Below, piece by piece: positions 4,026-46,841 of a stretch of 64,000 nt of DNA (positions are counted from its first letter, which is position 1; each line of letters begins with the position of its first letter). Made by a program: the position numbers and the translations under genes. The notes beneath the pieces are model-generated. The model worked only from the letters and a program-made list of their open reading frames with translations. It was not told the origin of the DNA and ran no database searches. The DNA is taken from IMG/VR virus record IMGVR_UViG_3300044625_001067, positions 124,001-188,000 of that record; one strand, 5' to 3'.

Positions 4026-4090
4026 ATTATACCGTTTCTGCGCCGCAGAAACAAGGGTGGAAACCGTCGGTTTAGGTTCGGTAAACCGCC
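4026..4090 (-). promoter_or_regulatory. repeated promoter cassette
   Basis: Two dyads 22 bp apart, TTGTTT-17-TATAAT, spacer dyad TTTCTGC-GGC-GCAGAAA. Confidence 0.85.
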
Positions 4091-5440: not shown

Positions 5441-5505
5441 ATTATACCGTTTCTCCCCCGCAGAAACAAGGGGGGAAACCGTCAGTGTAGGTACGGTAAA
5501 CCGCC
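5441..5505 (-). promoter_or_regulatory. repeated promoter cassette
   Basis: Two dyads 22 bp apart, TTGTTT-17-TATAAT. Confidence 0.85.
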
Positions 5506-7289: not shown

Positions 7290-7354
7290 ACTATACCGTT
7301 TCTGCGGGGCAGAACCAAGCCGGGAAACCGGCCAAGGAAAGGCGGTTAACCGCC
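7290..7354 (-). promoter_or_regulatory. repeated promoter cassette
   Basis: Distal dyad is the perfect palindrome GGCGGTTAACCGCC (7341-7354); TTGGTT-17-TATAGT. Confidence 0.85.
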
Positions 7355-11333: not shown

Positions 11334-11378
11334 AGTATAACCGGTTTCGCCGTGGGGCGAAAGGGCGGTTTACCGTCC
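11334..11378 (-). promoter_or_regulatory. promoter cassette heading a tRNA operon
   Basis: Dyad GGCGGTTTACCGTC, TTTCGC-17-TATACT, followed by conserved leader GGTGGTTG...GGCAACTTGAAAATTT. Confidence 0.85.
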
Positions 11379-11564: not shown

Positions 11565-11587
11565 GAGTTTGTTCCGGCTACAGTGCA

Positions 11588-11636
11588 ATCATAGCGCCTT
11601 TCCACCGAAGAGTAAAGGGCGGGTGACCGAACCGCC
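11588..11636 (-). promoter_or_regulatory. repeated promoter cassette
   Basis: TTTACT-17-TATGAT with an adjacent degenerate dyad. Confidence 0.7.
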
Positions 11637-11715
11637 ACCCGAAATTTCTCTCAAGTAGCGGGGTTACGCACCTACTATAGTGCTACCCTGGCAAAGTAAA
11701 CGTGAAACACGCAGG

Positions 11716-11886
11716 TTAGAGGTAAGCGGAGCCAAGGATCACTTGTTCGCTCAGTTCATTAGTTCTCTTCAAGACTTGAGCAGCTTTTAGGAACTTTAAC
11801 GCCACTATGGGGTTAAGCCCACGAGATTGCTTGTACTTCCCCATTAAAGAAAGGTAAAGTTTTTCCGAGTTAGTTAATGTATTCAT
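11716..11886 (-). CDS. hypothetical protein
   Basis: MNTLTNSEKLYLSL..., ATG at 11886. Confidence 0.6.
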   Translation of the reverse strand: MNTLTNSEKLYLSLMGKYKQSRGLNPIVALKFLKAAQVLKRTNELSEQVILGSAYL

Positions 11887-11905
11887 GAGGGGTTCTTTAG
11901 AAGAC

Positions 11906-13066
11906 TTACACACCCTTGTATAGGAGGCTAACTAGATCTTTAGCGTCCGCTTCCGAAAGTTTGGACCAAGGGCCTTGCTCAAAAGTCTTGAGTGGGGATT
12001 GTGTACCATGCATATATAGGGCAACCACCTCGTCTTCTGACAAACCGAACTTTTCTTTTAGTTGCTTATCAACTTGAAACCTGTTTCTTCTAACAGTTCC
12101 CAGTATAGGAAGGTCTTCTTCCAACTTTTTCACGGAGGGCTTCATACTAGCTTTGTCTACTCTATGCATACCCATGACTTTCCACTCACGGGTTTGCCAA
12201 TTTCCGTAATTACCTAAAATAGCTCCTGTAGCATCCGCAGGAACTAGGGCTTCTGACCCTTTCCCGTGCTCCATGCCGGGGAAGTAGAAGGCACCAAGGG
12301 ACTCGGCCAAGGAAGCTTTAAAGCTTTGTTGGGAAAGCCCGAAGTCCACCCACCTCCCCTTTCCTGTCTTCTCTTCTACAAACAGGTTTCCTGGGTGTGC
12401 GTCGTTGTGAGCTACACCTAGTCGATGGAGGTCTGCCAAAGCTTTCCAATAAATATCGGCTGCAGGTGTGCCGGATACTTTTTGTTCGGGATTAGTAGCG
12501 AGAGACTCTATATCTCGCCCTGGAACTTTAGTCATGGCTATTCTACCGTGCCTCAACCCCAAGTGCTCCATGCCCATTTCGTCTGTTCCTTGAGTCTTCA
12601 ATCTGCCGTTTAAGTCAGCGGCTATTAAGTCCGGGCCGAGATCTTTAGCTCCTACTTTCTTTAAAATACTTGCCTCATTCTCTCCGAGAATTCCTCTCTT
12701 TATATATTGCCCCTTTTCGTTCACGGTTACGAACCCGTAAGCACCGCGTCCGGCCACCTGAGCTACGCTGCCTTTCTTGTCGGACCAGTCTTCAAAATCA
12801 GGGTTACCTGTTCTTTTGAGAATTTTGCTCTCAAGTTTTTTGTCATAACTATGCTCGTTGGACATATCCCAATCTTCTCGTCTTGTTGCGGTATCCTTGA
12901 TTTTATTAGTTTTATCTACGTCTTTCGTTGCATTACCAGAAAGTTTATCCTCAATGGAAATCAAAGACTTTGAAACTTGTGGACTAAGAGTTGCAGAACA
13001 CTTTTTAGAACTTTGAACACAGGATGCCCCACAACTCTTTCCGGCTTTACAATTCTTCTTAGTCAT
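11906..13066 (-). CDS. protein kinase-like protein with N-terminal Cys motif
   Basis: GRGAYG Gly loop, LHRLGVAHNDAHPGN catalytic loop, VDFGL; N-terminal CKAGKSCGASCVQSSKKC. Confidence 0.85.
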   Translation of the reverse strand: MTKKNCKAGKSCGASCVQSSKKCSATLSPQVSKSLISIEDKLSGNATKDVDKTNKIKDTATRREDWDMSNEHSYDKKLESKILKRTGNPDFEDWSDKKGSVAQVAGRGAYGFVTVNEKGQYIKRGILGENEASILKKVGAKDLGPDLIAADLNGRLKTQGTDEMGMEHLGLRHGRIAMTKVPGRDIESLATNPEQKVSGTPAADIYWKALADLHRLGVAHNDAHPGNLFVEEKTGKGRWVDFGLSQQSFKASLAESLGAFYFPGMEHGKGSEALVPADATGAILGNYGNWQTREWKVMGMHRVDKASMKPSVKKLEEDLPILGTVRRNRFQVDKQLKEKFGLSEDEVVALYMHGTQSPLKTFEQGPWSKLSEADAKDLVSLLYKGV

Positions 13067-13121
13067 GTGTGTTTGCGCCGATAGCTTAACTTACCCTTAC
13101 GAGTGATCTTTTAGTTCTGTA

Positions 13122-13192
13122 CACGTGGTAGAGGATTCGAACCCCTACGGGGAGTTTTGGAGACTCCAGTCCTACCGTTAGACGAACCACGT
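13122..13192 (-). tRNA. trnW: tRNA-Trp (CCA)
   Basis: ACGTGGT/ACCACGT, loop CT-CCA-AA. Confidence 0.92.
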
Positions 13193-13216
13193 AGGTTTGA
13201 GTTTCGCGTTAGCGAA

Positions 13217-13298
13217 AGCGGGTAACAGGATTCGAACCTGCGTGAACTATTCGCCTCTTGTTTGGAAAACAAGTGCTCTACCGCTGAGCTATACCCGC
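13217..13298 (-). tRNA. trnG: tRNA-Gly (TCC) with 15-nt variable arm
   Basis: GCGGGTA/TACCCGC, loop TT-TCC-AA, variable region AGGCGAATAGTTCAC. Confidence 0.9.
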
Positions 13299-13329
13299 AT
13301 TTTACTTGAGTTTTTTCGTGAGAGAAAAG

Positions 13330-13402
13330 AGCGGTCGACGTGACTCGAACACGCGACTTTCTACTTGGAAGGAAGACACTCTACCGACTGAGTTACGACC
13401 GC
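13330..13402 (-). tRNA. trnG: tRNA-Gly (TCC)
   Basis: GCGGTCG/CGACCGC, loop CT-TCC-AA. Confidence 0.9.
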
Positions 13403-13438
13403 ATTTTGCTTTAGTGTAATTTTCGCGTAAGCGAAAAG

Positions 13439-13511
13439 GGTGATAGACGGGACTCGAACCCGCTAATTACTGGTTCACAACCAGTTGCCCATCCCTTAGG
13501 CTTCTACCACC
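13439..13511 (-). tRNA. trnH: tRNA-His (GTG)
   Basis: Encoded G-1:C73 pair, loop TT-GTG-AA. Confidence 0.92.
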
Positions 13512-13542
13512 ATTGTAGGGGAGTTTCTGACTAATTTAAGCT

Positions 13543-13589
13543 AGATGATTGTGTTTCCAATAACGAAGGAGTTAATTGCTGAATCATCT
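13543..13589 (-). repeat. stem-closed CAGCAA loop element, copy 3 (diverged interior)
   Basis: Same AGATGATT-CAGC.A...AATCATCT frame with a different inner sequence. Confidence 0.7.
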
Positions 13590-13610
13590 ACTTTTCTGCA
13601 GAGCAGAAAA

Positions 13611-13684
13611 TGGCGGACCGGGGAATTGAACCCCTGTTCCTCTGGGTTATGGGCCCAGCGTGACTACCGTGACACTCGTCCGCG
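13611..13684 (-). tRNA. trnfM: initiator-type tRNA-fMet (CAT), C33
   Basis: Unpaired C1:C72, GGG/CCC anticodon stem, loop CC-CAT-AA. Confidence 0.82.
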
Positions 13685-13735
13685 TTACACCTATACTATA
13701 GCGTTTTTAGCTAGGAGTAAACTTCTCAAGGCAAG

Positions 13736-13806
13736 TTCCTAAGATAGGATTCGAACCTATATAATCTCCTTCAAAGGGAGGTGTCCTTCCGTTAGACGAC
13801 TCAGGA
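13736..13806 (-). tRNA. trnQ: tRNA-Gln (TTG)
   Basis: TCCTGAG/CTTAGGA (U1:A72), loop CT-TTG-AA. Confidence 0.88.
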
Positions 13807-13881
13807 TCGGCTGCCTTAAGTAGGGAGGCTATTATAGCCCCCTAAGATGAAAGTAAACTCTTGGCTAAGGTAGCAAGGAAA

Positions 13882-14000
13882 GGAGCAAGGTTGGACTTGA
13901 ACCAACGGCTTGCTTTGCCCTCCAGCGTTACGGTCCTTTACCGAGGGTCTCTTGCGAGACTCAGAGGAGGTTGCCGCTCTACCAACTGAGCTACTTGCTC
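13882..14000 (-). ncRNA. tRNA-like RNA A (anticodon arm replaced by branched domain)
   Basis: Perfect acceptor GAGCAAG/CTTGCTC, canonical D and T arms, ~65-nt insert with two hairpins. Confidence 0.8.
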
Positions 14001-14050
14001 TTTGCACCCTGAATTAAGTCAAGGAGCTAGAGTTCTCCGTAAAGAGAACA

Positions 14051-14132
14051 TACCCGCCGGGAGACTCGAACTCCCACGCCTTTCGGCACTAGTTCCTAAA
14101 ACTAGCGTATATACCAGTTTCACCAGGCGGGC
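14051..14132 (-). tRNA. trnL: tRNA-Leu (TAG)
   Basis: GCCCGCC/GGCGGGT, loop TT-TAG-GA. Confidence 0.94.
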
Positions 14133-14160
14133 TTGACTGTGATCCCTATGAAAGGGAAAG

Positions 14161-14232
14161 AGCGAACGAAGGGATTTGAACCCTCGACATTCTCGTTGGC
14201 AACGAGGTACTCTACCGCTGAGTTACGTTCGC
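14161..14232 (-). tRNA. trnG: tRNA-Gly (GCC)
   Basis: GCGAACG/CGTTCGC, loop TT-GCC-AA. Confidence 0.95.
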
Positions 14233-14274
14233 ATTGCTCCTTGGAGCAGTTTTCTTCTGCTTTTACAGAAGGTA

Positions 14275-14362
14275 CGGAGAGAACAGGAATCGAACCTGCG
14301 CAGGGGGTCTCCCCCCTGTAACCGTTTTCAAGACGGTCTCCTCGTCCAGCCGGACTCTCTCC
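14275..14362 (-). tRNA. trnS: tRNA-Ser (TGA), atypical D arm
   Basis: GGAGAGA/TCTCTCC, loop CT-TGA-AA, 7-bp variable stem with GAGA loop. Confidence 0.88.
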
Positions 14363-14411
14363 AGTTACCGTAGCACGGTAAGTTTTAGCTAGAAAACCGG
14401 AAGGTTTTCAA

Positions 14412-14570
14412 TGGGAAATGTTGGATTTGAACCAACGCTCTCTCAACTGATCAGGTTGTGAGCGTGCTGTTACAAAGGCGAAGGTCGGGGATCAATCCGC
14501 CATTCGACACTCGTACTGAAGCACTCACCTGGGTAATGTGCCCAGGGCTCTACCGCTGAGCTAATTTCCC
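14412..14570 (-). ncRNA. tRNA-like RNA B (~95-nt variable region)
   Basis: Acceptor GGGAAAT/ATTTCCC, canonical D and T arms, arm CCTGGG-CACATTA-CCCAGG, large structured insert. Confidence 0.8.
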
Positions 14571-14637
14571 GTTAACTCTGTTGACCGGAATTGAATCGGT
14601 CCCTGAACGTGCTGCCGTTTTTCTGCAAAGCAGAAAA

Positions 14638-14709
14638 TGGGGCATCTCGGATTCGAACCGAGGACTGACCGGTTAAAAGCCGGATACTCTACCGCTGAGT
14701 TAATGCCCC
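14638..14709 (-). tRNA. trnK: tRNA-Lys (TTT)
   Basis: GGGGCAT/ATGCCCC, loop CT-TTT-AA. Confidence 0.95.
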
Positions 14710-14792
14710 CCGTATTAAATTTTCAAGTTGCCTTTTGCTTTCGCAAAAGCGGGGAGGAGGTGAAGGCGAAGCCCTCTCTCAACCACCCCTTT

Positions 14793-14836
14793 AGTATAAC
14801 CGGTTTCGCCGAAAGGTGAAAGGGCGGGAAACCGCC
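14793..14836 (-). promoter_or_regulatory. promoter cassette heading a tRNA operon
   Basis: Dyad GGCGGGAAACCGCC, TTTCAC-17-TATACT, conserved leader. Confidence 0.85.
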
Positions 14837-14839
14837 GTA

Positions 14840-15064
14840 TCAAAGGGTGAACTCAAATACAACCTTGCGAACAAAGAAATCGTCAAGGTGCCCGTTGCCG
14901 TACATCCTGACGCAGTCCTGCAGCTTCGCAAGAATCTCGTCGTGGGTGGGAGCGGATGCCCCCTCTTCCAAAAGCTCGGTGAGTTCTCCAGCGATGGAGA
15001 CACAAAGTTCGTGCTCCTTACGAGCACTCAACCCTTTAAGGGTGCCGAAAGTTGCTTGAGCCAT
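14840..15064 (-). CDS. hypothetical protein, paralog of 8298..8537
   Basis: ATG 15064 (MAQATFGTLKGLSARKEHELCVSI). Confidence 0.8.
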   Translation of the reverse strand: MAQATFGTLKGLSARKEHELCVSIAGELTELLEEGASAPTHDEILAKLQDCVRMYGNGHLDDFFVRKVVFEFTL

Positions 15065-15095
15065 TTTGACTTGGAGGACCAACGGTAACAATTTA

Positions 15096-15161
15096 AGTTT
15101 AGCTGGTTTCACCGTGAAGCGAAAGGGTGGGAAACCGCCCCGGTTCGTTCGGTTAACTGAG
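15096..15161 (-). promoter_or_regulatory. repeated promoter cassette
   Basis: TTTCGC-17-TAAACT with dyads upstream. Confidence 0.7.
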
Positions 15162-15176
15162 CGAGTCACGGAGCAA

Positions 15177-15247
15177 AGCCCTGCCAGGGAATCGAACCCT
15201 GCTCTGCAGTTTACAAAACTGCTGCATCACCACAATGCTTGAAGGGC
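15177..15247 (-). tRNA. trnT: tRNA-Thr (TGT)
   Basis: Loop TT-TGT-AA; one acceptor mismatch. Confidence 0.85.
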
Positions 15248-15277
15248 ATTTTCCTTGTAGTTCTTCGGGGAGAACAA

Positions 15278-15366
15278 CGGAAGATGTGAGATTCGAACTC
15301 ACGGAGCTGCTTGCGCAGCTCAACGGTTTAGCAAACCGTCGCCTTCAACCACTCGGCCAATCTTCC
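15278..15366 (-). tRNA. trnS: tRNA-Ser (GCT)
   Basis: GGAAGAT/ATCTTCC, loop TT-GCT-AA, long variable arm. Confidence 0.94.
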
Positions 15367-15386
15367 AAAATTTCTCGTTAGAGAAA

Positions 15387-15459
15387 TTGCCCCAACCGGA
15401 TTCGAACCGGTATTTCCACCTTGAGAGGGTAGCGACCTAAGCCATTAGTCGATGAGGCC
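15387..15459 (-). tRNA. trnE: tRNA-Glu (CTC)
   Basis: Loop CT-CTC-AA, G1:A72 mismatch. Confidence 0.88.
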
Positions 15460-15496
15460 GTTTTCTGCGAAAAACAGAGAGTTTGCTTAAGCAAAG

Positions 15497-15569
15497 TAGG
15501 AATGACAGGATTCGAACCTGTGTATCTCGGTAATCGGCCGAAGGTATTAGGCCACTATACGACATTCTC
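15497..15569 (-). tRNA. trnI: atypical tRNA-Ile (GAT), C33/U37
   Basis: Loop CC-GAT-TA, weak acceptor end. Confidence 0.7.
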
Positions 15570-15630
15570 AGAAAACGAGCAGTTACGTATGATGCTCAGC
15601 ACAGGTTCCCCAGCAAAAGGGCTGAGAGGA

Positions 15631-15702
15631 TGGGAGCACTCGGGAACGACCCGAGGGCCTTTTCCGTGTCAAAGAAACGCTCTACCACTGAGCTATGCTC
15701 CC
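15631..15702 (-). tRNA. trnV: tRNA-Val (GAC), atypical T loop GTCGTTC
   Basis: GGGAGCA/TGCTCCC, loop TT-GAC-AC. Confidence 0.87.
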
Positions 15703-15813
15703 AACCGGAGCAGTCACGCTCCGTACCTAGTTTCCTATAATTGCCTACTCGTGTCATCGCGGAAGTTGACGAAACTTCTAGAACTTTCGGCTCAAGTGGT
15801 GTTAGGCACCTGA

Positions 15814-15968
15814 TTAAAGTGGAGAGACTCGAACTCCCATAGCAGGATTACGTCTAGCTGTCACCTGCACGGTGGTTGCAACCATGAGCTAGGAGGTTGC
15901 TATTTGTTCACAACCCCATCCGTATTGGCTGAATCCACACCGCCGTATACCAATTCCGGCACACTTTG
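15814..15968 (-). ncRNA. tRNA-like RNA C (Leu-type body, expanded anticodon and variable arms)
   Basis: AAAGTG/CACTTT acceptor, Leu-type D arm CCG-GAATTGGTATA-CGG, T arm GGGAG-TTCGAGT-CTCTC, ~65-nt insert closed by GGTG/CACC, GCAGG/CCTGC variable stem. Confidence 0.78.
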
Positions 15969-16027
15969 TTCTTAGCGTTTGAGGAGAACCTGAAGTAGGT
16001 CCCTCTTCTTTCTCTCTGTAAGAGAAA

Positions 16028-16100
16028 CTGGAGTGGGAGGGTTCGAACCTCCAACGAAGCGGTTAACAGCCGCACGATCTGCCAATTGATCTACACCCCA
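16028..16100 (-). tRNA. trnN: tRNA-Asn (GTT)
   Basis: TGGGGTG/CACTCCA, loop CT-GTT-AA. Confidence 0.92.
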
Positions 16101-16252
16101 TTGAGCCCTGCATTACGGCAGAGGGTACTAAGAAGCACTCCGGGGTCGCGAGCGTCCCCATACGAGTAGGAATCGTTACTGAAACCGGTTATTACTGTCC
16201 CTTAAGTTGCAAACCGACAACCTCGCTTAAGGAATTTTCGCGAGTGCGAAAA

Positions 16253-16325
16253 TGGAGACAATCGGAATTGAACCGATCACAAGTCGCTTGCGAAGCGTCC
16301 TCGCCACCCTGGAACATGTGCCCCC
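16253..16325 (-). tRNA. trnA: tRNA-Ala (CGC), atypical D arm
   Basis: G3:U70, loop TT-CGC-AA. Confidence 0.8.
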
Positions 16326-16431
16326 GTTTTCCTATCGGAAAACAAAAGTTAGCCGATAGGGGACAGAGCGTCTCACCTCTGCGAGGAACGTTTCAGTTCG
16401 TTTTCCCCTTAGGGAAGTTGCCCGAAGGCAA

Positions 16432-16504
16432 TGGGTTTGGTGGGATTCGAACCCACAACATACCGGGTAAGAGCCGGTTACTCTGCCAATTGAGCTACAA
16501 ACCC
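16432..16504 (-). tRNA. trnK: tRNA-Lys (CTT)
   Basis: GGGTTTG/CAAACCC, loop CT-CTT-AC. Confidence 0.94.
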
Positions 16505-16567
16505 GAACCCCAAGTTTAGAAAGCACCATCGCAGGTACTTGGGCAACCTTTTTCGCTAACGCGAAAA

Positions 16568-16640
16568 TGGGAACGGCCTGATTTGAACAGGCGGCCTATC
16601 GGTTATCAACCGATTGCTCTTACCGCTGAGCTACGCTCCC
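16568..16640 (-). tRNA. trnI: tRNA-Ile (GAT)
   Basis: GGGAGCG/CGTTCCC, loop TT-GAT-AA. Confidence 0.93.
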
Positions 16641-16715
16641 TTGGTACTAAATTGTCAAGTTGCCCCCCGGAAACCGGGTCAGTAAGGAAAGCGGAAGCTT
16701 TCCAACCACCCCTTT

Positions 16716-16759
16716 AGTATAACCGGTTTTGCCGTAGGGCGAAAGGGCGGTTTACCGCC
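16716..16759 (-). promoter_or_regulatory. promoter cassette heading a tRNA operon
   Basis: Dyad GGCGGTTTACCGCC, TTTCGC-17-TATACT, conserved leader. Confidence 0.85.
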
Positions 16760-16817
16760 CCCTTCACCCCTGGTCAACATTGAAGTATTCACTCAGGAAT
16801 GCTTGCGTAAGCAAACA

Positions 16818-16892
16818 TGGCGAGAGGCAGGATTTGAACCTGCGATCTCCAGCTTATGAGACTGGCGAGATACCGGGCTTCTCCACTCCGCT
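16818..16892 (-). tRNA. trnM: tRNA-Met (CAT)
   Basis: Loop CT-CAT-AA; acceptor needs a 1-nt bulge. Confidence 0.82.
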
Positions 16893-16948
16893 ATAAAGAC
16901 CTAGTATTTCAGTTCGGTTTTCGTTTTACGAAAAATGCCCAAGGGCAA

Positions 16949-17056
16949 TGGGTATGGACAGGATTCGAACCTGCAATGCCAGAGGCGACTGCTGTACTTA
17001 CAGCCCACTATTCCCAAGAACCGTGTACACAATTCCTGCTTCAGTGAGACATACCC
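16949..17056 (-). ncRNA. tRNA-like RNA D (Tyr-derived, expanded D arm, 4-nt anticodon loop)
   Basis: GGGTATG/CATACCC acceptor, T arm GCAGG-TTCGAAT-CCTGT, long hairpin in the D position, GCTGT-AAGT-ACAGC arm, GCC-TCT-GGC variable arm. Confidence 0.72.
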
Positions 17057-17079
17057 GTGAAGTTTCCGATAGGAAACAA

Positions 17080-17162
17080 TGGGAGCGGTAGGATTCGAAC
17101 CTACGAAGCATTGAGCAACCGGGTTACAGCCGGTCTCCTTTGACCACTCGGAGAACACTCCC
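17080..17162 (-). tRNA. trnY: tRNA-Tyr (GTA)
   Basis: GGGAGTG/CGCTCCC, loop CT-GTA-AC. Confidence 0.93.
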
Positions 17163-17169
17163 ATTTTGC

Positions 17170-17358
17170 TCTGCAGACACTGCTTTGGGTTGAGCCACCC
17201 CCTACTTTGTATCTCTAAAGTAGTAAAATAGGTTCTTCTAATTGCGGTTTTAACCGCATAACGAGAGAAGTTTTTGGATTTCGAAGAAACCTTTGCACCC
17301 CTTAAACTACCCAAGCATGGAGCTCAGGGGCTGAGTCGAACAGCCATTTCTCTCTTTT
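17170..17358 (-). ncRNA. possible circularly permuted tRNA-like/tmRNA-like element
   Basis: Orphan T arm GGCTG-TTCGACT-CAGCC followed by ...GAGCTCCA; downstream GGGGTGCAAAGGTTTC and several hairpins. Confidence 0.35.
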
Positions 17359-17377
17359 ATTTTCGCGTGAGCGAAAA

Positions 17378-17458
17378 TGGGTCAGGTGGGACTCGAACCC
17401 ACGGTGTTTGTATATCCGGTTAAAAGCCGGGACCTGTCGCCGCTAAGGTAACTGACCC
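17378..17458 (-). tRNA. trnK: atypical tRNA-Lys (TTT) with 12-nt variable loop
   Basis: GGGTCAG/CTGACCC, loop CT-TTT-AA, variable TATACAAACACC. Confidence 0.8.
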
Positions 17459-17533
17459 ATGGTGTTAAATTGTCAAGTTGCCTCCCGCAAGAGCGGAAGC
17501 GAGGCGGAAGCCGAGCTTCCCAACCACCCCTTT

Positions 17534-17576
17534 ACTATAGCGTTTTTCACCGGGCAAGTAAAGCGGGGAAACCGCC
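17534..17576 (-). promoter_or_regulatory. promoter cassette heading a tRNA operon
   Basis: TTTACT-17-TATAGT, dyad, conserved leader. Confidence 0.85.
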
Positions 17577-18065: not shown

Positions 18066-18109
18066 ACTATAGCGGTTTTCACAGGGGAAGTAAAGCCGGG
18101 AAACCGCCC
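18066..18109 (-). promoter_or_regulatory. repeated promoter cassette
   Basis: TTTACT-17-TATAGT, dyad GCCGGGAAACCGCC. Confidence 0.85.
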
Positions 18110-18739: not shown

Positions 18740-18783
18740 AGTATACCGTGTCTGCCGAGCAGGAACAAGGGCGGGAAACCGCC
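18740..18783 (-). promoter_or_regulatory. repeated promoter cassette
   Basis: TTGTTC-17-TATACT, dyad GGCGGGAAACCGCC. Confidence 0.85.
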
Positions 18784-19514: not shown

Positions 19515-19579
19515 ATTATAGCGTTTCTGCCGAGCAAACCAAGCTGGAAAACCGCCTTATGGGGGTAGGGTTTACCGCC
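19515..19579 (-). promoter_or_regulatory. repeated promoter cassette (last minus-strand copy)
   Basis: TATAAT, TTGGTT (16-bp spacing), two dyads. Confidence 0.75.
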
Positions 19580-19904: not shown

Positions 19905-19969
19905 AACGGTTAACCCCCACCCTAGGGCGGTTTACCCCCCTTTGTTCTGCTCCACAGAAACGGTATAGT
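19905..19969 (+). promoter_or_regulatory. repeated promoter cassette (first plus-strand copy)
   Basis: Two dyads 21 bp apart, TTTGTT-17-TATAGT. Confidence 0.8.
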
Positions 19970-20560: not shown

Positions 20561-20626
20561 GACGGTTAACCGAACCTTTCGAGGACGGTTTCCCCGCTTG
20601 CCTTTTCAACCGTAAGACGCTATAGT
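20561..20626 (+). promoter_or_regulatory. repeated promoter cassette
   Basis: Two dyads 23 bp apart, TTGCCT-17-TATAGT. Confidence 0.85.
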
Positions 20627-21738: not shown

Positions 21739-23226
21739 ATGACATTTGTGACAGAAAACTTAACGAAGAGTTCTAAAGCTGCTTCGAACGGAAATGGAAA
21801 ATGCAACGATAACTGTTCTGTGAGTGAAGCCGTTGTCTGTGATTTACGCTCTCGCCCGGAACCTCGTCGAATTGACCTCGACAAACTATACGAGTGCGAC
21901 CCGAAAGACTATATTGGCTATTTTGCCGACGAAACCTCTTACGACAACCTTATTCAAGAAGACTGCGACGTTTATGTGGGCGGAGTGAAAGTTGTTGCCT
22001 TTCGTAAGGCACTTTTTCCGAAGCTGCGCGATGGTTCGAAAGGTAGCCCGGAAACTTGGAAATACTTCCGCTGGGCAGCAAGAGACTTGTACTCAGACCA
22101 ACGAGGCCTAGTTGCTGGTAGAGAACTAACTACCCAACTCGAGATAAGGGTAACCAACGGTATTCTAAACTTCTTCAAGAAGGCGATGGCCGGTCAAGTC
22201 ACTGACGTGGAAGAGGCACTGAAAATTGCTTCTCTCTCCCCCGACATGTCAAAGCTCACTGTCCGAGTGAATGATGTTAAAAAGGACTTCCCAGAAATTG
22301 AGAAAGCTTTAGAATCTATCGAGAAGGAACTTCGCAAGAAAACGCTGAGCGAAGAAAGAAAGGTAGAGCTGAAGGAAGCGAAGGGTAGAGAACTTGCGAA
22401 GTGGTTCCCGACTTGGCTGTCTGAGACTTGGAGTGCATCTACGGATAAGGTTTCTGAGGCGAAACGTGCCGACGACAGGTATGTGGGAAAACAATACCGT
22501 TCAAACAAGTGCTATTCCAACGTGATTGGTGCTTTTGATAGGGGTGCACGTAACCCTTACGGTCGTTTGACCGCAACAACTGTAAAAGACTATGAGGGGT
22601 TCGTAAGCCACACGGATATTTATCAGACCGCGTGCTCTGCGCTCAAAGAGACCTTGAACACTCCGGAAAACCCTCGGTGGGACCTCCTTCACGAACGGTT
22701 CAGTAACGTGAAAGACCCGCACTATAACCTCTTCGGTACGGTGTTCACTGCCCTTACGTTAAACTGGAACTTCCGCTGTGCGATGCACTATGATGGAAAT
22801 AACTGCGAAGGTGGTATTGCCGTTCTTACTGCAATTACTCAGGGCGAATATGACGGTCACTACCTTGTGTTCCCTGAAATTCGTTGCGCTTTTGACCTTC
22901 GCGACGGAGATTTCATTGCAGGCGACAACCAGGGCTTGATTCACGGCAACACCGCGATGATCCCTAAAACTCCGGACGCTGAACGAGTTTCGTTCGTTTT
23001 CTATTCACGAGAGCGCATGACCGCTCTTGACGATATGGAGTGTGAGGAGTGCCGCCGAGATTTCATGCGATACGCAGCAGACAACCACAAGGAATACGGA
23101 AAGGGTCACAAGACATGGAATGGTGTCTGGAGCGGAATGTGGAAATCACCGGAATGGATGACGTATAAAGCCGAACACGGCATGGAACGTTGCTCAAATA
23201 CTAACTATTGGGGCACCGATAATTGA
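21739..23226 (+). CDS. 2OG-Fe(II) dioxygenase, TET/JBP family (copy 1)
   Basis: FTALTLNWNFRCAMHYD (HxD), IHGNT (distal His), ERVSFVFYSRE (2OG Arg), YLVFPE; matches the JBP/TET pattern. Confidence 0.85.
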   Translation: MTFVTENLTKSSKAASNGNGKCNDNCSVSEAVVCDLRSRPEPRRIDLDKLYECDPKDYIGYFADETSYDNLIQEDCDVYVGGVKVVAFRKALFPKLRDGSKGSPETWKYFRWAARDLYSDQRGLVAGRELTTQLEIRVTNGILNFFKKAMAGQVTDVEEALKIASLSPDMSKLTVRVNDVKKDFPEIEKALESIEKELRKKTLSEERKVELKEAKGRELAKWFPTWLSETWSASTDKVSEAKRADDRYVGKQYRSNKCYSNVIGAFDRGARNPYGRLTATTVKDYEGFVSHTDIYQTACSALKETLNTPENPRWDLLHERFSNVKDPHYNLFGTVFTALTLNWNFRCAMHYDGNNCEGGIAVLTAITQGEYDGHYLVFPEIRCAFDLRDGDFIAGDNQGLIHGNTAMIPKTPDAERVSFVFYSRERMTALDDMECEECRRDFMRYAADNHKEYGKGHKTWNGVWSGMWKSPEWMTYKAEHGMERCSNTNYWGTDN

Positions 23227-23281: not shown

Positions 23282-23617
23282 ATGGACACAAACAAACAGC
23301 TTAACGGTGGCGATGCGGAGCGGCAAGTTGCCTCGGGGAGTATTGAACCCAGTGAAGCAACAACCGCCATTACAGTGGAACTCCCGGTAAACTTCGCTGA
23401 GGCTTTTCGAGCACTTGCTGAACGAGAGGAGTTGTCGGAGAGTAACCTTATTGTACGATCGCTCGGGCTCTACTCCGTTGCATCTCAAGCCGAGAGTGAA
23501 GGGTACGGACTGACGTTTACTCGTATTGAGGGAACCAACGACCTGACCGCCAAGGAAGCAATTCGCGTCGAAGATGAGCCCGCGTCTAACTTGATCCTTC
23601 CTGGAAATAGGCAATGA
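23282..23617 (+). CDS. ribbon-helix-helix-like protein
   Basis: ITVELPVNFAEAFRALAERE..SESNLIVRSLGLY; similar to the C-terminus of 1535..2704. Confidence 0.6.
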   Translation: MDTNKQLNGGDAERQVASGSIEPSEATTAITVELPVNFAEAFRALAEREELSESNLIVRSLGLYSVASQAESEGYGLTFTRIEGTNDLTAKEAIRVEDEPASNLILPGNRQ

Positions 23618-25101
23618 TCCGAGAGGTAATATCAAAAGAGTTACAGTCAAGGGTCGAACCCTTACAGATTGATAGGGGTGCTCTTGAAAACTGCCCTCGC
23701 AGTGAATATATTGGACAATTCCCTAAGGCGACAGACTATGACCGCGTAATCGATGAAGACTGTGATGTTTACGTCTCAGGTGTAAAAGTCTTGTCCTTCA
23801 GGAAAGCTCTTTTCCCACTTCTTTCCGAGGGTTCTTCCAAACAGAAGGAGACTTGGGACTTTTTCCGAGCAGCTTCAAAAGAAGTTTACGGCACCCAAAG
23901 AGGTGTCGTTGCGGGCACAGAGTTTACAACTCGCCCCGAATCACGCTTAACCAAAGGACAGGTTGCCTTTTTCGCTAGTGCTTCAGTGGGCTTGATCACA
24001 ACGCTCGCTCAAGCGCGAGAAACCCTAGAAAGTTCGGATGAGCTCACCAGCAAGACTCTGAAAATCAAATACGTGAAGAAAGACTACCCCGAACTTGCGG
24101 AGAAAATGAAACCGTTAGAGGCGGAAATTCGCACACTGAACTCCGGAGACCCGAAACCAGAAAGTCTGAGAAACCAGAGAAGAGAACAGCTTTGGGGTTG
24201 GTTCGAACCTTGGTTACTAGAAGTTTGGCTGCCCTCAGAAAACAAAGTAGAAGAAGTTAAAAAAGTTCTAAACACTTACATAAGTTCCCAGTTGAACTTT
24301 AACCACTGCTACAGTAACGTCCTTGGGGCGATTGACCGTGGGGCTAGATTTCCCTACGGTCGTTTAAGCGGAACCACTCAGAGATACTATGAGCAGTTCT
24401 CAAAATACAGAGACATTTATTACACAGCCTGCGAAGGTTTCAGGTACAATTTTCCGGAGACTTGGGTCAAAGTCAAGGAAGTGATTTCGAGGGCTAAAGA
24501 CCCTAACTACAACTTGTTCGGCACTGCCTTTACGAGTGTAACCGTAAATTTCAATTTCAAGACTGCCTACCACGTTGACAAGAACAATTTGAAAGGGGGT
24601 ATGTCCGTCTTAACTGCTTTTACAAAAGGTGTTTATGAAGGTCACTACTTAGTGTTTCCCGAAGTGAGATTGGCCTTCAATTTAAGAGACGGGGACTTCA
24701 TCGTAGGGGATACTCAAACTTTGCTCCATGGTAACAGCCCCATGACAAAACTTACTGAAGATGCTGAGCGGGTTTCTCTGGTTTTCTACTCACGAGAGAA
24801 CATGAACCGATTGGACGATCTTGAGTGCGAAGAATGCCGAAAACAGTTCATGAAGTTTTCACTTCAGTCTCTGAAAGAACGGGGCAAAGATCATAAAGAT
24901 TGGAGAGGTGTTTGGCAAGGTATGTGGACTTCTCAAGAATGGCTAGACTTTAGAAAAGAAAGAAACTTGGAACACTGTTCAAACTCTAATTGGCAGCTTT
25001 CCTCGCCGTACGAGAACGAAGTTACGAAAGAGGTGAAGTTGTTCAAGGATGATCCAGGCGAAGGGTGGAAACTCGTACAAGTGTTTACACAAGATCGGTA
25101 A
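23614..25101 (+). CDS. 2OG-Fe(II) dioxygenase, TET/JBP family (copy 2)
   Basis: [33 protein letters not shown]; collinear with copy 1 along its length. Confidence 0.85.
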
Positions 25102-25157
25102 ACCGCCCTGAAGCCTTCGGCTTCCCCCTTGTTTCTGCTTCGCATAAATGCTATGAT
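25094..25157 (+). promoter_or_regulatory. repeated promoter cassette
   Basis: TTGTTT-17-TATGAT; distal dyad ATCGGTAAACCGCC. Confidence 0.75.
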
Positions 25158-30137: not shown

Positions 30138-30205
30138 GGCGGTTTCCCGGTTGCTCTGGGGGCGGTTTACCCTCCTTTGTTTCTGCAGCGCAGAAACGGT
30201 ATACT
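30138..30205 (+). promoter_or_regulatory. repeated promoter cassette
   Basis: Two dyads, TTGTTT-17-TATACT, spacer dyad TTTCTGC-AGC-GCAGAAA. Confidence 0.88.
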
Positions 30206-30229: not shown

Positions 30230-30514
30230 ATGGAAACTCATCAAGTCACGATCACTTTGTCCCTTAAGCTAGAGGGAGACCCGAGCACTCAAGACATTGC
30301 TAACGCCGCTGCTGCCAGCATGCGAGAACTGCCCCCTTTCCTTGAGGAAGGGTGGCTAAATAGCGTCCAACCCCCATTAAAGAAATTAACTCTTACTCCT
30401 AACCCCAACGCAAAGTGGTTCTTCAGTGTCACAAAGCTTCCACTCACCCCTGTGACTTCCTCTCGTGATTCTACACACGACTGCTACAAGGGTCGCTCAC
30501 CGATGGGTTTTTAA
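30230..30514 (+). CDS. hypothetical protein
   Basis: ATG 30230 (METHQVTITL) after promoter. Confidence 0.6.
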   Translation: METHQVTITLSLKLEGDPSTQDIANAAAASMRELPPFLEEGWLNSVQPPLKKLTLTPNPNAKWFFSVTKLPLTPVTSSRDSTHDCYKGRSPMGF

Positions 30515-30614: not shown

Positions 30615-30679
30615 GGCGGTTTCCCGTTCACCCTGGGGCGGTTTCCCGGCTTGTCTCTGCGGAGCAGAAACGGTATACT
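30615..30679 (+). promoter_or_regulatory. repeated promoter cassette
   Basis: Two dyads 22 bp apart, TTGTCT-17-TATACT. Confidence 0.88.
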
Positions 30680-31937: not shown

Positions 31938-31993
31938 CCGGTTGCTCCGGGGCGGTTTCCCGCCTTGTTTTCTCGAAGAGAAAACGCTATAGT
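31929..31993 (+). promoter_or_regulatory. repeated promoter cassette
   Basis: Dyad GGCGGTTTCCCGCC, TTGTTT-17-TATAGT, spacer dyad TTTTCTC-GAA-GAGAAAA. Confidence 0.88.
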
Positions 31994-38430: not shown

Positions 38431-38495
38431 TACGGTTGACCGTTTACTTCGAGACGGTTTCCCGCCTTTACTTCCCTGGTGAAAACCGGCATACT
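38431..38495 (+). promoter_or_regulatory. repeated promoter cassette
   Basis: Two dyads 22 bp apart, TTTACT-17-CATACT. Confidence 0.8.
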
Positions 38496-41582: not shown

Positions 41583-41638
41583 CCGCTTGCTCTGGGGCGG
41601 TTTCCCGGCTAGGTTTCTCGAAGGGAAACCGGTATAGT
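41574..41638 (+). promoter_or_regulatory. repeated promoter cassette
   Basis: Two dyads 22 bp apart, TAGGTT-17-TATAGT. Confidence 0.8.
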
Positions 41639-44471: not shown

Positions 44472-44669
44472 ATGAAAGGGGAAAGTGCCACTTGGCAGTG
44501 GGGTGACGAGCTACAAGAACGAAAGCTACCGTCTCCTGAGGAACAAGCCTTAGCTGACGCCGAGCACTCACTGCGAATGGTAGCGGCAGGCCTACAGCTA
44601 GAAAAAGCGGATAACCGCCCTGAGCGGGGCGGTTTAGGCCCTTGCTTTAACGCGACAAACACGCTATAA
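44472..44669 (+). CDS. hypothetical protein
   Basis: 65 aa ORF; the 3' end runs through a promoter cassette. Confidence 0.45.
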   Translation: MKGESATWQWGDELQERKLPSPEEQALADAEHSLRMVAAGLQLEKADNRPERGGLGPCFNATNTL

Positions 44670-44670
44670 T
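44606..44670 (+). promoter_or_regulatory. repeated promoter cassette
   Basis: Two dyads 22 bp apart, TTGCTT-17-TATAAT. Confidence 0.8.
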
Positions 44671-46221: not shown

Positions 46222-46264
46222 GATGGTTCCCCGGCTTGCTTTGCTGGGGCAAAACAGCTATAAT
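46222..46264 (+). promoter_or_regulatory. repeated promoter cassette
   Basis: TTGCTT-17-TATAAT with a degenerate dyad. Confidence 0.75.
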
Positions 46265-46486: not shown

Positions 46487-46550
46487 AGCGGTTAGCCCCC
46501 TTGCCTTGGGCGGTTTCCCCGTTTGTTTTCCAGAAGGAAAACGCTATAGT
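46487..46550 (+). promoter_or_regulatory. repeated promoter cassette (last copy in window)
   Basis: Two dyads 22 bp apart, TTGTTT-16-TATAGT. Confidence 0.82.
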
Positions 46551-46574: not shown

Positions 46575-46841
46575 ATGTCATTCAACCCAGACTGGGCTTC
46601 ACCTCCAGGGTCTATCGTAAGGGAGTTACGTCTGGAGCGTAGAATTTCTCTTCACGACTTTGCGGGAGAAACAGGGTTAACCGTACCCGAAGTTCTTGAA
46701 CTTGAGGAAGGGAACCTTCGCATCGACCCTCATCTAGCGGAGCGCCTTGAGTACGTGTTCGGACAACCAACTGAAAAGTTTTGGCTCACCCTTCAACTAA
46801 ACTACGACAATGACCTTAAAAGAGGAAGAAAGCATGATTGA
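46575..46841 (+). CDS. HigA/VapI-like XRE-family HTH protein
   Basis: PPG..VRE....SLHDFA...GL...LEEGNLRID..LAERLE.VFG...FWLTLQ.NYD; ATG 46575. Confidence 0.8.
   Translation: MSFNPDWASPPGSIVRELRLERRISLHDFAGETGLTVPEVLELEEGNLRIDPHLAERLEYVFGQPTEKFWLTLQLNYDNDLKRGRKHD

What the first reader, a model, noticed from the sequence alone, without database searches (positions are those of the whole stretch)
30177..30205. Promoter -35/spacer regions are self-complementary with covarying sequence (hairpin or cruciform promoters?)
Across copies the stretch from inside the -35 through the spacer changes sequence but keeps its dyad. Examples: TTTCTGC-N3-GCAGAAA (4035, 30180), TTTTCTC-GAA-GAGAAAA (31968), TTTTCC-AGAA-GGAAAA (46525), GGTTTCTC-GAA-GGGAAACC (41612), TTTCGCC-N4-GGCGAAA (11345, minus) and TTTGC-TGGG-GCAAA (46240). 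Covariation upstream of the predicted TSS argues for a DNA secondary structure or a symmetric binding site. Hairpin promoters with 5-7 bp stems and 3-nt loops are established for N4 virion RNA polymerase, but not in a sigma70-like layout.
Basis: partly seen in the sequence, partly recalled or inferred. Interest (0 to 1): 0.62.

Follow-up and report, generated by a model that had tools for sequence, protein, structure and literature searches.

The report
Palindrome built into repeated phage promoters
A 277-kb phage, probably a cyanophage, carries about 90 near-identical host-type promoters, and roughly half hold a short inverted repeat between the -35 and -10 boxes that behaves as a DNA-level control element, not as an RNA hairpin or an N4-style polymerase promoter.

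Summary
The window lies in a 277,244-bp IMG/VR phage whose nearest isolate is Synechococcus phage S-CBWM1. The phage has 88 copies (23 in the window) of one cassette: a GC-rich upstream element, TTG, a 17-bp spacer, TATAGT, and an ATG about 26 nt further on.

About half the copies carry an inverted repeat spanning -33 to -15: 46/88, against 17±3.6 in column shuffles. The commonest form is GTTTCTGC-N3-GCAGAAAC. Pooling relatives gives 33 arm types, nearly all with a C·G closing pair.

The repeat is optional. Orthologous promoters gain and lose it, and copies without it carry little information in those columns.

An internal control helps. Similar hairpins directly after the phage's tRNA genes show the RNA wobble signature (G·T 12, A·C 1). 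The promoter repeats do not (7 vs 10; Fisher p=0.007). So the constraint is strand-symmetric, which points to DNA.

There is no N4-like giant RNA polymerase and no MerR gene, and the spacer is 17 bp.

I slightly favour a supercoil-extrudable hairpin that switches the promoter off (0.3) over a dimeric repressor operator (0.25). A functionless by-product of cassette spread (0.2) and an RNA role (0.1) remain possible. It is a new variant of PeSL-like promoter cassettes.

The parts
30177..30205 (+). The finding: -35 TTGTTT (30177-30182), dyad GTTTCTGC/AGC/GCAGAAAC (30179-30197), -10 TATACT (30200-30205)
   Evidence: As single-stranded DNA the hairpin folds at -7.3 kcal/mol, z = -3.8.
30138..30171 (+). 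Upstream elements of the same cassette: distal GGCGGTTTCCCG (30138-30149) and proximal GGGCGGTTTACC (30160-30171)
   Evidence: GGCGGTTTMCC occurs 55 times in the genome and 0 times in the control pattern. The terminator scan flags 30158-30175.
30230..30514 (+). Small ORF served by this promoter, starting at ATG 30230
4026..4054 (-). Cassette with a perfect 8-bp dyad, GTTTCTGC-GGC-GCAGAAAC, and -10 TATAAT
5441..5469 (-). Cassette with the dominant-class dyad and one G.G mismatch
7290..7318 (-). Cassette with a 6-bp dyad, TTCTGC-CCC-GCAGAA
8748..8776 (-). Cassette with the dominant-class dyad and one T.C mismatch
11334..11362 (-). Promoter of the tRNA array, with dyad TTTCGCC-CCAC-GGCGAAA and -10 TATACT
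14793..14821 (-). tRNA-array promoter with dyad TTTCACC-TTTC-GGCGAAA, 6 of 7 paired (A.C)
15096..15124 (-). Cassette with only a 4-bp dyad
16716..16744 (-). tRNA-array promoter with dyad TTTCGCC-CTAC-GGCAAAA, 6 of 7 paired (C.A)
17534..17562 (-). Cassette without a usable dyad
18066..18094 (-). Cassette without a usable dyad
18740..18768 (-). Cassette with a decayed dominant-class dyad (4 bp)
19515..19543 (-). Cassette with a decayed dominant-class dyad; first of the leftward array
19941..19969 (+). Cassette with a 5-bp dyad, TTCTG-CTCCA-CAGAA; first of the rightward array
20598..20626 (+). Cassette without a dyad
25129..25157 (+). Cassette with the dominant-class dyad and one mismatch
30651..30679 (+). 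Cassette with dyad GTCTCTGC-GGA-GCAGAAAC, 7 of 8 paired (C.A)
31965..31993 (+). Cassette with a perfect 8-bp dyad, GTTTTCTC-GAA-GAGAAAAC
   Evidence: Its upstream element is the top terminator-like site in the scan.
38467..38495 (+). Cassette without a usable dyad. A near relative shows two changes that create a fourth pair.
41610..41638 (+). Cassette with dyad GGTTTCTC-GAA-GGGAAACC (one T.G). A 92-94% identical relative has CTTTCC-GCAA-GGAAAG at the same site.
44642..44670 (+). Cassette without a dyad
46236..46264 (+). Cassette with dyad TTTGC-TGGG-GCAAA. A relative has a perfect 7-bp version.
46522..46550 (+). Cassette with dyad GTTTTCC-AGAA-GGAAAAC, driving an 88-aa XRE-type HTH gene at 46575-46841

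Best explanation
The stretch is the core of a repeated early-promoter cassette of a jumbo phage, probably a cyanophage. It is read by the host RNA polymerase with its primary sigma factor (TTG, 17 bp, TATAGT).

In about half the copies, the DNA from -33 to -15 is a short inverted repeat with 5-8 bp arms, a 3-5 nt centre and a C.G closing pair. I take this to be a strand-symmetric DNA-level control element, not an RNA hairpin.

The mode of action I favour slightly is small-hairpin (cruciform) extrusion under negative supercoiling, possibly helped by a protein. Extrusion would remove about 19 bp from the spacer, so the -35 and -10 boxes could no longer be bound together and the promoter would switch off. 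The dyad-bearing early promoters would thus be sensitive to supercoiling or timing.

Shown: the promoter architecture, the excess and diversity of dyads, their optional nature, and their strand symmetry compared with RNA hairpins in the same genomes.

Inferred: the host, the early timing, extrusion in vivo, and the direction of the effect.
For: 1. Pairing rather than one sequence is kept. There are 33 arm/loop types among 313 distinct cassettes, and 16 types in this genome found with a PWM blind to the dyad. Non-dominant perfect arms number 18 against 4.4 expected.
2. The features look like hairpins across all arm classes. The closing pair is C.G in 98 cases and G.C in 8.
3. Rare one-off arms are perfectly complementary. 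Examples are GTCTTTGC/GCAAAGAC and CTAC/GTAG, and strain pairs exist in which one member has the mismatches and the other the compensated stem. Among orthologous variants there are 6 double changes that keep a Watson-Crick pair, against about 1 expected.
4. The constraint is strand-symmetric. Promoter dyads show G.T 7 against A.C 10. The tRNA-trailer hairpins of the same phages show 12 against 1 (Fisher p = 0.007). A cruciform folds both strands, so it has no wobble bias.
5. The arms are not needed for the promoter to be recognisable as a family member. The 158 dyad-less cassettes carry 0.1-0.9 bits in those columns.
6. There is experimental precedent. The N4 P1 hairpin placed between the -35 and -10 of E. 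coli rrnB P1 abolished promoter activity, and novobiocin restored it (PMC4496689, citing Dai et al. 1997).
7. The single-strand DNA hairpins fold at -5 to -7.3 kcal/mol, mostly with z of -2.4 to -4.5; the 46236 copy is weaker at -3.9 kcal/mol, z -0.7.
Against: - Arms of 8 bp are short for extrusion at in-vivo superhelicity. N4 manages this only with special GNA loops, whereas these loops are random at 0.1-0.2 bits.
- Fifty distinct cassettes from at least three diverged phage lineages share exactly the same arms while their loops are randomised. That looks like sequence-specific recognition.
- Single-sided changes that break a pair far outnumber compensated ones, 54 to 6.
- Spacers without a dyad are as conserved between strains as the stems are, 1.7% against 3.4%. 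So the conservation is not specific to pairing.
- I obtained no transcript or structure-probing data.
Confidence: 0.3

Rival explanations
1. The repeat is a palindromic operator. A dimeric repressor, phage-encoded or possibly host-encoded, binds the double-stranded repeat (7-8 bp half-sites, free 3-bp centre) across the -35 box and spacer, and shuts off one set of early promoters. Other arm classes would be sites for other regulators, or decayed sites kept palindromic by templated mutation.
For: - Identical arms with random centres occur in 50 distinct cassettes from diverged phage lineages, while the upstream element has diverged.
- The mismatch distribution is L-shaped: 50 copies with 0 mismatches, 22 with 1 and 14 with 2.
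- The position is the classical one for repressor operators.
- The mismatch spectrum is strand-symmetric.
- The phage encodes three XRE-type HTH proteins, two of them directly behind dyad promoters.
Against: - The distance between the shared TTTC and GAAA blocks ranges from 5 to 10 bp across classes, and the centre of symmetry moves by up to 3 bp.
- Unique arms that are perfectly palindromic would each need their own regulator.
- The C.G closing pair is shared by all classes.
- None of the HTH genes is conserved across all dyad-bearing relatives, and one is present in a relative with almost no dyads.
- There is no sign of a host regulon: exact matches in 120 listed prokaryote contigs are scattered across many taxa (one contig holds two), and none is from a cyanobacterium.
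Confidence: 0.25
2. The repeat has no function of its own. An ancestral cassette happened to contain a quasi-palindrome. Cassettes spread and exchange by recombination, as in the PeSL model, and replication template-switching keeps the arms complementary.
For: - The dyad is optional, and it is gained, lost or swapped wholesale at orthologous promoters.
- The cassettes of each genome share their own version of the upstream element, which points to concerted evolution.
- In one strain pair the loop is replaced by its reverse complement and an arm mismatch is corrected at the same time. That fits a strand-switch event.
- The mismatch types look like undirected decay.
- Conservation between strains is not specific to dyad-bearing spacers.
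Against: - The enrichment is about 30-fold and locked in position, and it persists in lineages whose DNA polymerases are only 68-87% identical.
- The excess of perfect stems over one-mismatch stems is strong.
- The C.G closing-pair bias is 98 to 8.
Confidence: 0.2
3. The repeat acts as an RNA hairpin on read-through transcripts from the upstream gene. It would mark the boundary between modules, for example by protecting a 3' end, guiding RNase E, or helping termination after the GC-rich upstream hairpin.
For: - Hairpins of the same style, with a T-rich 5' arm, an A-rich 3' arm and a C.G closing pair, follow tRNA genes directly. This holds for 19 of 49 tRNAs here, 16 of 38 and 13 of 36 in relatives, and 2.3% of random positions.
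- The upstream element followed by the T-rich 5' arm scores as the best terminator-like site in the region.
- A cassette tends to have either a perfect upstream hairpin or the spacer dyad, not both (odds ratio 0.26, p = 0.01).
Against: - The promoter dyads lack the wobble signature that the tRNA-trailer hairpins have: 7 G.T and 10 A.C against 12 and 1 (p = 0.007).
- No U-tract follows the hairpin.
- The first promoters of divergent arrays still carry dyads, though decayed ones.
- RNAalifold found no consensus structure for the 23 window copies.
Confidence: 0.1
4. These are N4-type hairpin promoters, recognised in extruded form by a phage single-subunit RNA polymerase.
For: The stem length (5-8 bp) and the 3-nt loops resemble N4 P1-P3, and the top of the stem is GC-rich (PMC4496689).
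Against: - There is no giant virion polymerase; the largest ORF is 1,591 aa.
- PF00940 gave no match, although its control genomes did not respond either.
- The loops are not conserved.
- There are 88 sites spread over about 170 kb rather than a few at one genome end.
- Each hairpin sits inside a complete TTG-17-TATAGT promoter, with an ATG 26 nt after it.
- The phage's own transcription genes are two sigma70-family proteins.
Confidence: 0.02

Closest known systems
PeSL (promoter-early stem-loop) cassettes of T4-like phages (PMC2839356, PMC4122927)
   Same: - Dozens of near-identical sigma70-like early promoters in front of small ORFs.
- Each promoter is joined to a stem-loop.
- The stem sequences differ between phages.
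- The cassettes sit at points where related genomes differ.
   Different: - In PeSLs the stem-loop lies just upstream of the -35 box and is read as a terminator. Here a second inverted repeat lies inside the promoter, between -35 and -10.
- The phage belongs to a different lineage, with a gamma-type DNA polymerase and S-CBWM1 as its nearest isolate.
N4 virion-RNAP early promoters, and the engineered rrnB P1 promoter carrying the N4 P1 hairpin in its spacer (PMC4496689)
   Same: - Small inverted repeats with a 3-nt loop and a GC-rich top, in phage early promoters.
- The engineered construct has exactly this layout, a hairpin between the -35 and -10 of a sigma70 promoter, and it was switched off in a gyrase-dependent way.
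   Different: - This phage has no N4-type polymerase.
- The loops are not conserved and the GNA motif is not general.
- There are 88 dispersed copies rather than 3.
- The natural N4 hairpin spans -17 to -5 relative to its own start site.
MerR-family promoters (PMC8169799)
   Same: A dyad-symmetric site lies within the spacer of a sigma70 promoter.
   Different: - MerR promoters have over-long spacers of 19-20 bp with a centred dyad.
- Here the spacer is 17 bp in 53 copies and 16 bp in 8, and the dyad is offset towards the -35 box.
- No MerR gene was found.
Repressor operators of temperate phages, such as the 17-bp operators of lambda and the conserved inverted repeats at phiC31 early promoters (from my own knowledge, not checked here)
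   Same: Palindromes of 17-19 bp with a free centre overlap many early promoters of one phage.
   Different: - The arm sequences, arm spacing and centre of symmetry vary far more than one repressor would allow.
- No conserved repressor gene was identified.
- No integrase was looked for, so the lifestyle of this phage is unknown.
The natural cruciform in the Vibrio parahaemolyticus exsBA region that is attenuated by HlyU (PMC10325908; title and abstract only)
   Same: A DNA cruciform acts as a transcriptional control point that a protein can relieve.
   Different: It is a single chromosomal locus in an intergenic region, not a repeated element inside the promoter spacer.

Membership tests
PeSL-like promoter/stem-loop cassette | Many near-identical sigma70-like promoters in front of small ORFs | tested here: met
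   There are 88 copies and none in a shuffled genome. In 83 of 88 an ATG ORF follows within 300 nt, at a median of 26 nt.
PeSL-like promoter/stem-loop cassette | A stem-loop immediately upstream of the -35 box that acts as a terminator | tested here: inconclusive
   The upstream element forms a perfect stem of 5 bp or more in 26 of 88 copies, against 14.8±3.6 expected. The terminator scan flags it in 3 window cassettes. Termination itself was not tested.
PeSL-like promoter/stem-loop cassette | Cassettes mark points of exchange between related genomes | tested here: inconclusive
   Orthologous genes carry different cassette versions, and each genome has its own version of the upstream element. 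Breakpoints of insertions and deletions were not mapped.
PeSL-like promoter/stem-loop cassette | The host phage is T4-like | tested here: not met
   The DNA polymerase is gamma-type and 57% identical to that of S-CBWM1, genus Aokuangvirus.
N4 virion-RNAP hairpin promoter | A giant virion single-subunit RNA polymerase gene | tested here: not met
   The largest ORF is 1,591 aa. PF00940 found nothing, but its control genomes were also silent.
N4 virion-RNAP hairpin promoter | A 5-7 bp stem with a 3-nt loop | tested here: met
   Stems are 5-8 bp and loops mostly 3-4 nt.
N4 virion-RNAP hairpin promoter | A conserved loop with a sheared G:A pair and conserved stem bases | tested here: not met
   The loop columns carry 0.1-0.2 bits. 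GAA loops occur only with the TCTC and TTCC arms.
N4 virion-RNAP hairpin promoter | The hairpin spans -17 to -5 of the transcript it drives | not testable with these tools
By sigma70 geometry the hairpin spans about -33 to -15.
MerR-type spacer-dyad promoter | A 19-20 bp spacer | tested here: not met
   The spacer is 17 bp in 53 copies and 16 bp in 8. The other 27 have no TTG at the expected place.
MerR-type spacer-dyad promoter | A MerR-family regulator gene | tested here: not met
   PF13411 gave no match, while 12 of 14 control genomes responded.
Dimeric-repressor operator | Conserved half-sites with an unconstrained centre, overlapping the promoter | tested here: met
   In the dominant class of 115 cassettes the arms carry 1.1-1.9 bits and the centre 0.1-0.2 bits.
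Dimeric-repressor operator | Fixed half-site spacing and one recognisable half-site across all sites | tested here: not met
   There are 33 arm types. The TTTC-to-GAAA spacing ranges from 5 to 10 bp, and the centre of symmetry moves by up to 3 bp.
Dimeric-repressor operator | A cognate DNA-binding protein that co-occurs with the sites | tested here: inconclusive
   Three XRE-type HTH genes were found. None co-occurs with the dyads across relatives. Most ORFs were not annotated.
Cruciform-gated promoter | An inverted repeat between the -35 and -10 boxes | tested here: met
Cruciform-gated promoter | Extrusion at physiological superhelical density, with loss of activity | not testable with these tools
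   Only single-strand folding energies could be computed, -5 to -7.3 kcal/mol.
Functional RNA hairpin | G.U pairs tolerated much better than A.C on the transcribed strand | tested here: not met
   Promoter dyads show 7 G.T against 10 A.C. The positive control, tRNA-trailer hairpins, shows 12 against 1.

The most novel reading that the evidence does not exclude
A whole clade of jumbo phages, probably freshwater cyanophages, has built extrudable mini-hairpins into the spacers of about 40% of its host-type early promoters. DNA supercoiling would then gate early transcription directly. Supercoiling could change with DNA injection, with the phage's own topoisomerase II, or with the day-night cycle of a cyanobacterial host. 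This would be the first natural counterpart of the engineered hairpin-in-spacer promoter.
Probability: 0.2. Interest if true: 0.8.

Novelty: new variant of a known kind. Interest (0 to 1): 0.5.

Why it matters
Repeated promoter cassettes in large phages are known. An inverted repeat placed inside the -35/-10 spacer, with its pairing kept across dozens of copies and several phage species, has not, to my knowledge, been described.

If the repeat extrudes, it would be a natural promoter switch that senses DNA topology, used on a genomic scale. If it is an operator, it defines a large early regulon and a missing regulator in an uncultivated group of jumbo phages.

Either way, the roughly 90 mapped promoters give a ready transcription map for a 277-kb genome made up mostly of unknown genes. 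The comparison of wobble pairs between promoter dyads and tRNA-trailer hairpins is also a reusable way to tell DNA-level from RNA-level constraint.

Tried and rejected
I did not try another route, so there are no start sites or RNA ends.
- RNAalifold on the 23 window copies gave no consensus structure. The set mixes several registers with copies that have no dyad.
- My first pattern search in relatives had the wrong spacing and found nothing. I replaced it by fetching the records and scanning with a PWM.
- S-CBWM1, first 50 kb only: 4 weak cassettes and none with a dyad. The dyad is therefore specific to the jumbo clade, although the tRNA-trailer hairpins are shared.
- Candidate regulators: no MerR and no HU/IHF-like gene. 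The XRE-type HTH genes do not co-occur with the dyads.
- Host regulon: exact palindrome matches in prokaryote genomes are scattered, nearly all one per contig, with no cyanobacteria among the 120 listed.
- Loop hypermutation as evidence of single-strandedness: not supported. Loops change at 15% against a neutral rate of 9.9%, which is not significant.
- Stem conservation as proof of selection on pairing: weakened, because dyad-less spacers are equally conserved.
- A split of hairpins into pyrimidine-first and purine-first types was uninformative, because the dominant arm falls just below my threshold.

Full report
**What the window is**

The window is bases 124,001-188,000 of a 277,244-bp IMG/VR virus record with 49.8% GC and a CheckV completeness of 98%. 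It encodes a tail sheath, a portal, topoisomerase II and a gamma-type DNA polymerase.

The polymerase is 57% identical to that of Synechococcus phage S-CBWM1, and the two phages share gene order around it. A cyanobacterial host is therefore an inference. IMG/VR holds relatives whose polymerases are 68-100% identical. I fetched the records of seven of them.

**The observation**

At the finding itself:
- -35 TTGTTT is at 30177-30182.
- The arms GTTTCTGC and GCAGAAAC are at 30179-30186 and 30190-30197, around the loop AGC.
- -10 TATACT is at 30200-30205.
- The ATG is at 30230.

The stretch belongs to a cassette family. A PWM scan finds 88 copies and none in a shuffled genome. Of these, 23 lie in the window. 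The copies run as 31 on the plus strand, then 44 on the minus strand, then 13 on the plus strand. All but two lie between 4 and 171 kb; the other two are at about 252 and 268 kb.

The cassette layout is as follows:
- One or two GC-rich upstream elements, GGGCGGTTTMCC. This motif occurs 55 times, against 0 for the control pattern.
- TTG.
- A 17-bp spacer in 53 copies and a 16-bp spacer in 8.
- A -10 box: TATAGT in 41 copies, TATACT in 19 and TATAAT in 12.
- An ATG ORF of at least 40 aa within 300 nt in 83 of 88 copies. The ATG lies a median of 26 nt after the -10 box.

This is a host-type promoter for the primary sigma factor. The phage's own transcription genes are two small sigma70-family proteins at about 252 and 259 kb. 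The first of them is served by a cassette, which fits an early-to-late cascade. That timing is an inference.

**Is the dyad more than chance?**

Yes.
- Perfect stems of 6 bp or more occur in 32 of 88 spacers, against 4.7 (maximum 11) in column shuffles.
- A mismatch-tolerant score of 5 or more is reached by 46 of 88, against 17.3±3.6.
- A PWM that ignores the dyad columns recovers the same promoters, with 16 arm types.
- Outside the dominant class, 18 promoters have perfect 5-bp arms, against 4.4 expected (maximum 13 in 2000 permutations).
- The spacers are 0.76% of the genome and hold 39 of the 171 perfect hairpins with stems of 7 bp or more. Shuffled genomes give about 47 such hairpins in all.

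In the window's 23 copies alone the signal is modest: 64.8% of cells are paired, against 60.0% in shuffles. Slid registers also pair well, because the 5' arm is pyrimidine-rich and the 3' arm purine-rich.

About half the copies have no usable dyad.

**Comparison with relatives**

The relatives have the same cassette. Each lineage has its own version of the upstream element, yet they share the same dominant dyad.

Pooling everything fetched gives 313 distinct cassettes, of which 127 have stems of 5 bp or more and fall into 33 arm/loop types. Some of these loci were fetched by matching the dominant dyad, so that class is over-represented.

Fifty cassettes carry exactly GTTTCTGC-N3-GCAGAAAC. Their loop columns carry 0.1-0.2 bits. 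The mismatch distribution is L-shaped, with 50, 22, 14, 13 and 16 cassettes having 0 to 4 mismatches.

The 158 cassettes without a dyad carry little information in the arm columns. The arms are therefore not needed for a copy to be recognisable as a family member.

The closing pair is C.G in 98 cases and G.C in 8, across all classes.

Promoters of orthologous genes often differ. Some carry different perfect dyads, for example GTTTTCTC/GAGAAAAC against GTTTCTGC/GCAGAAAC in front of proteins that are 85% identical. Others have a dyad in one genome and none in the other.

**Change between close strains**

Between this genome and a close strain, four-fold degenerate sites differ by 9.9%. In cassettes that align without gaps, the rates are as follows:

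| Part of the cassette | Differences |
|---|---|
| Stems | 3.4% |
| Loops | 15% (not different from neutral) |
| -10 box | 3.2% |
| TTG | 1.6% |
| CGGTT core of the upstream element | 0% |
| Spacers without a dyad | 1.7% |

The arms are therefore conserved and the centre is free. But the conservation is not specific to pairing.

Among orthologous variant pairs, 54 changes are one-sided and break a pair. Six are double changes that keep a Watson-Crick pair, against about 1 expected.

Three individual cases stand out:
- One promoter has two arm mismatches here and a perfect, novel 8-bp stem in the close strain.
- A G-C pair has become an A-T pair in another.
- In one strain pair the loop is replaced by its reverse complement while an arm mismatch is corrected. 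That fits a template-switch event.

**RNA or DNA?**

A control turned up in passing. Hairpins of the same style start within 0-3 nt of the 3' end of the phage's tRNA genes. They have a T-rich 5' arm, an A-rich 3' arm and a C.G closing pair.
- This holds for 19 of 49 tRNAs here, 16 of 38 and 5 of 21 in two relatives, and 13 of 36 in S-CBWM1.
- The rate at random positions is 2.3%.
- Orthologous tRNAs keep the hairpin with different sequences.

These transcribed hairpins show the RNA wobble signature, with G.T 12 and A.C 1. The promoter dyads do not, with G.T 7, A.C 10 and other mismatches 23. Fisher's exact test gives p = 0.007.

The promoter dyads are therefore under a strand-symmetric constraint. 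That points to double-stranded DNA, or to a cruciform in which both strands fold. It argues against a sense-strand RNA hairpin.

Some points still favour an RNA role:
- The upstream element followed by the T-rich 5' arm is the best terminator-like site in the region.
- Cassettes tend to have either a perfect upstream hairpin or the spacer dyad, not both (odds ratio 0.26, p = 0.01).

**Choosing a mechanism**

N4-type promoters are excluded for practical purposes:
- There is no giant polymerase; the largest ORF is 1,591 aa.
- The loops are not conserved.
- There are 88 dispersed sites.
- Each hairpin sits inside a complete sigma70-type promoter.

MerR-type control is excluded by the 17-bp spacer and the lack of a MerR gene.

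Two DNA-level readings remain.

*The repressor-operator reading.* It is favoured by the identical arms with a free centre across species, and by the classical position. Against it:
- There are 33 arm types.
- The half-site spacing varies from 5 to 10 bp, and the centre of symmetry moves.
- Unique arms are perfectly palindromic.
- The C.G closing pair is shared by all classes.
- No regulator co-occurs with the dyads.
- No host regulon was found.

*The extrudable-hairpin reading.* It explains the pairing, the closing pair and the strand symmetry. It also has a direct experimental precedent: the N4 P1 hairpin placed in the rrnB P1 spacer switched that promoter off in a gyrase-dependent way (PMC4496689). 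Against it:
- The arms are short.
- The loops are random.
- The dominant arm sequence is conserved.

A third possibility is a functionless by-product of cassette spread combined with quasi-palindrome correction. This stays plausible because the dyad is optional and turns over.

My estimates are:

| Explanation | Probability |
|---|---|
| Extrudable hairpin | 0.30 |
| Repressor operator | 0.25 |
| By-product | 0.20 |
| RNA role | 0.10 |
| N4-type promoter | 0.02 |
| Something else | remainder |

**Comparison with known systems, and novelty**

The cassette as a whole resembles the PeSL promoter/stem-loop cassettes of T4-like phages (PMC2839356, PMC4122927). There, however, the stem-loop sits upstream of the -35 box, and the phages belong to another lineage.

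A pairing-preserving inverted repeat inside the spacer of many sigma70-type promoters is, as far as I can find, undescribed. I therefore file it as a new variant of a known kind.

**Limits**

- There are no transcript or probing data.
- The host is inferred.
- Several counts are small.
- The pooled set is enriched for the dominant class by the way it was fetched.

Noticed in passing
window 660-17459, minus strand; for example hairpins at 13592-13610 and 14619-14637: The window holds an array of at least 34 tRNA genes. Many are followed within 0-3 nt by a short hairpin with a T-rich 5' arm, an A-rich 3' arm and a C.G closing pair. These hairpins are kept, with different sequences, at orthologous tRNAs as far away as S-CBWM1, and they show an RNA-type wobble bias (G.T 12, A.C 1). 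Their role is unknown; a 3' processing or protection signal is one possibility.
   Followed up: partly
window 30138-30171 and upstream of every cassette: The GC-rich upstream element has an invariant CGGTT core and is centred near -42.5, often with a second copy 22-23 bp further upstream. Its sequence is specific to each phage lineage: GGGCGGTTTCCC here and GTTCGGTTCNC in an 87%-polymerase relative. That suggests either a phage-encoded factor evolving together with its site, or a terminator stem.
   Followed up: partly
window 11334-11362, 14793-14821, 16716-16744 and 17534-17562, minus strand: The promoters of the tRNA array form their own subclass. They have a -35 box of TTTCGC, TTTCAC or TTTACT, a -10 box of TATACT or TATAGT, and a conserved leader that begins AAAGGRGTGGTTG.
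   Followed up: no
G000:C1 252206-252820 and 258675-259442 (outside the window; loci L067 and L068): There are two small sigma70-family genes, in open frames of 204 and 255 aa. The first sits behind a cassette promoter. They are probable drivers of middle or late transcription.
   Followed up: partly
window 46575-46841 (+); also G000:C1 95668-96036 and 97212-97478 (-): There are three XRE-type HTH proteins. Two of them lie directly downstream of dyad-bearing cassettes. Their distribution in relatives does not follow that of the dyads.
   Followed up: partly
window 21739-23226 and 23614-25101 (+): Two tandem paralogous ORFs of 495 aa each match phrog_24024. One also shows a weak match to queuine tRNA-ribosyltransferase.
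   Followed up: no
G000:C1 about 191980-194720 (outside the window): A motif of a different kind is repeated in the late region: TCTTTGC-loop-GCAAAGA, then GATATAGTCTGAA, then CTTTCTG-GAAA-CAGAAAG. It may be a late promoter or terminator unit.
   Followed up: no
G000:C1 96241-96263 (outside the window): A G9-TTCA-C9 hairpin lies next to a cassette promoter.
   Followed up: no
L085-L088 (record G008) compared with L052 (record G002), promoter at G002 79652: Between two close strains the 3-nt loop is replaced by its reverse complement (TCC to GGA), and an arm mismatch is corrected at the same time. This fits a strand-switch mutation at a quasi-palindrome.
   Followed up: partly
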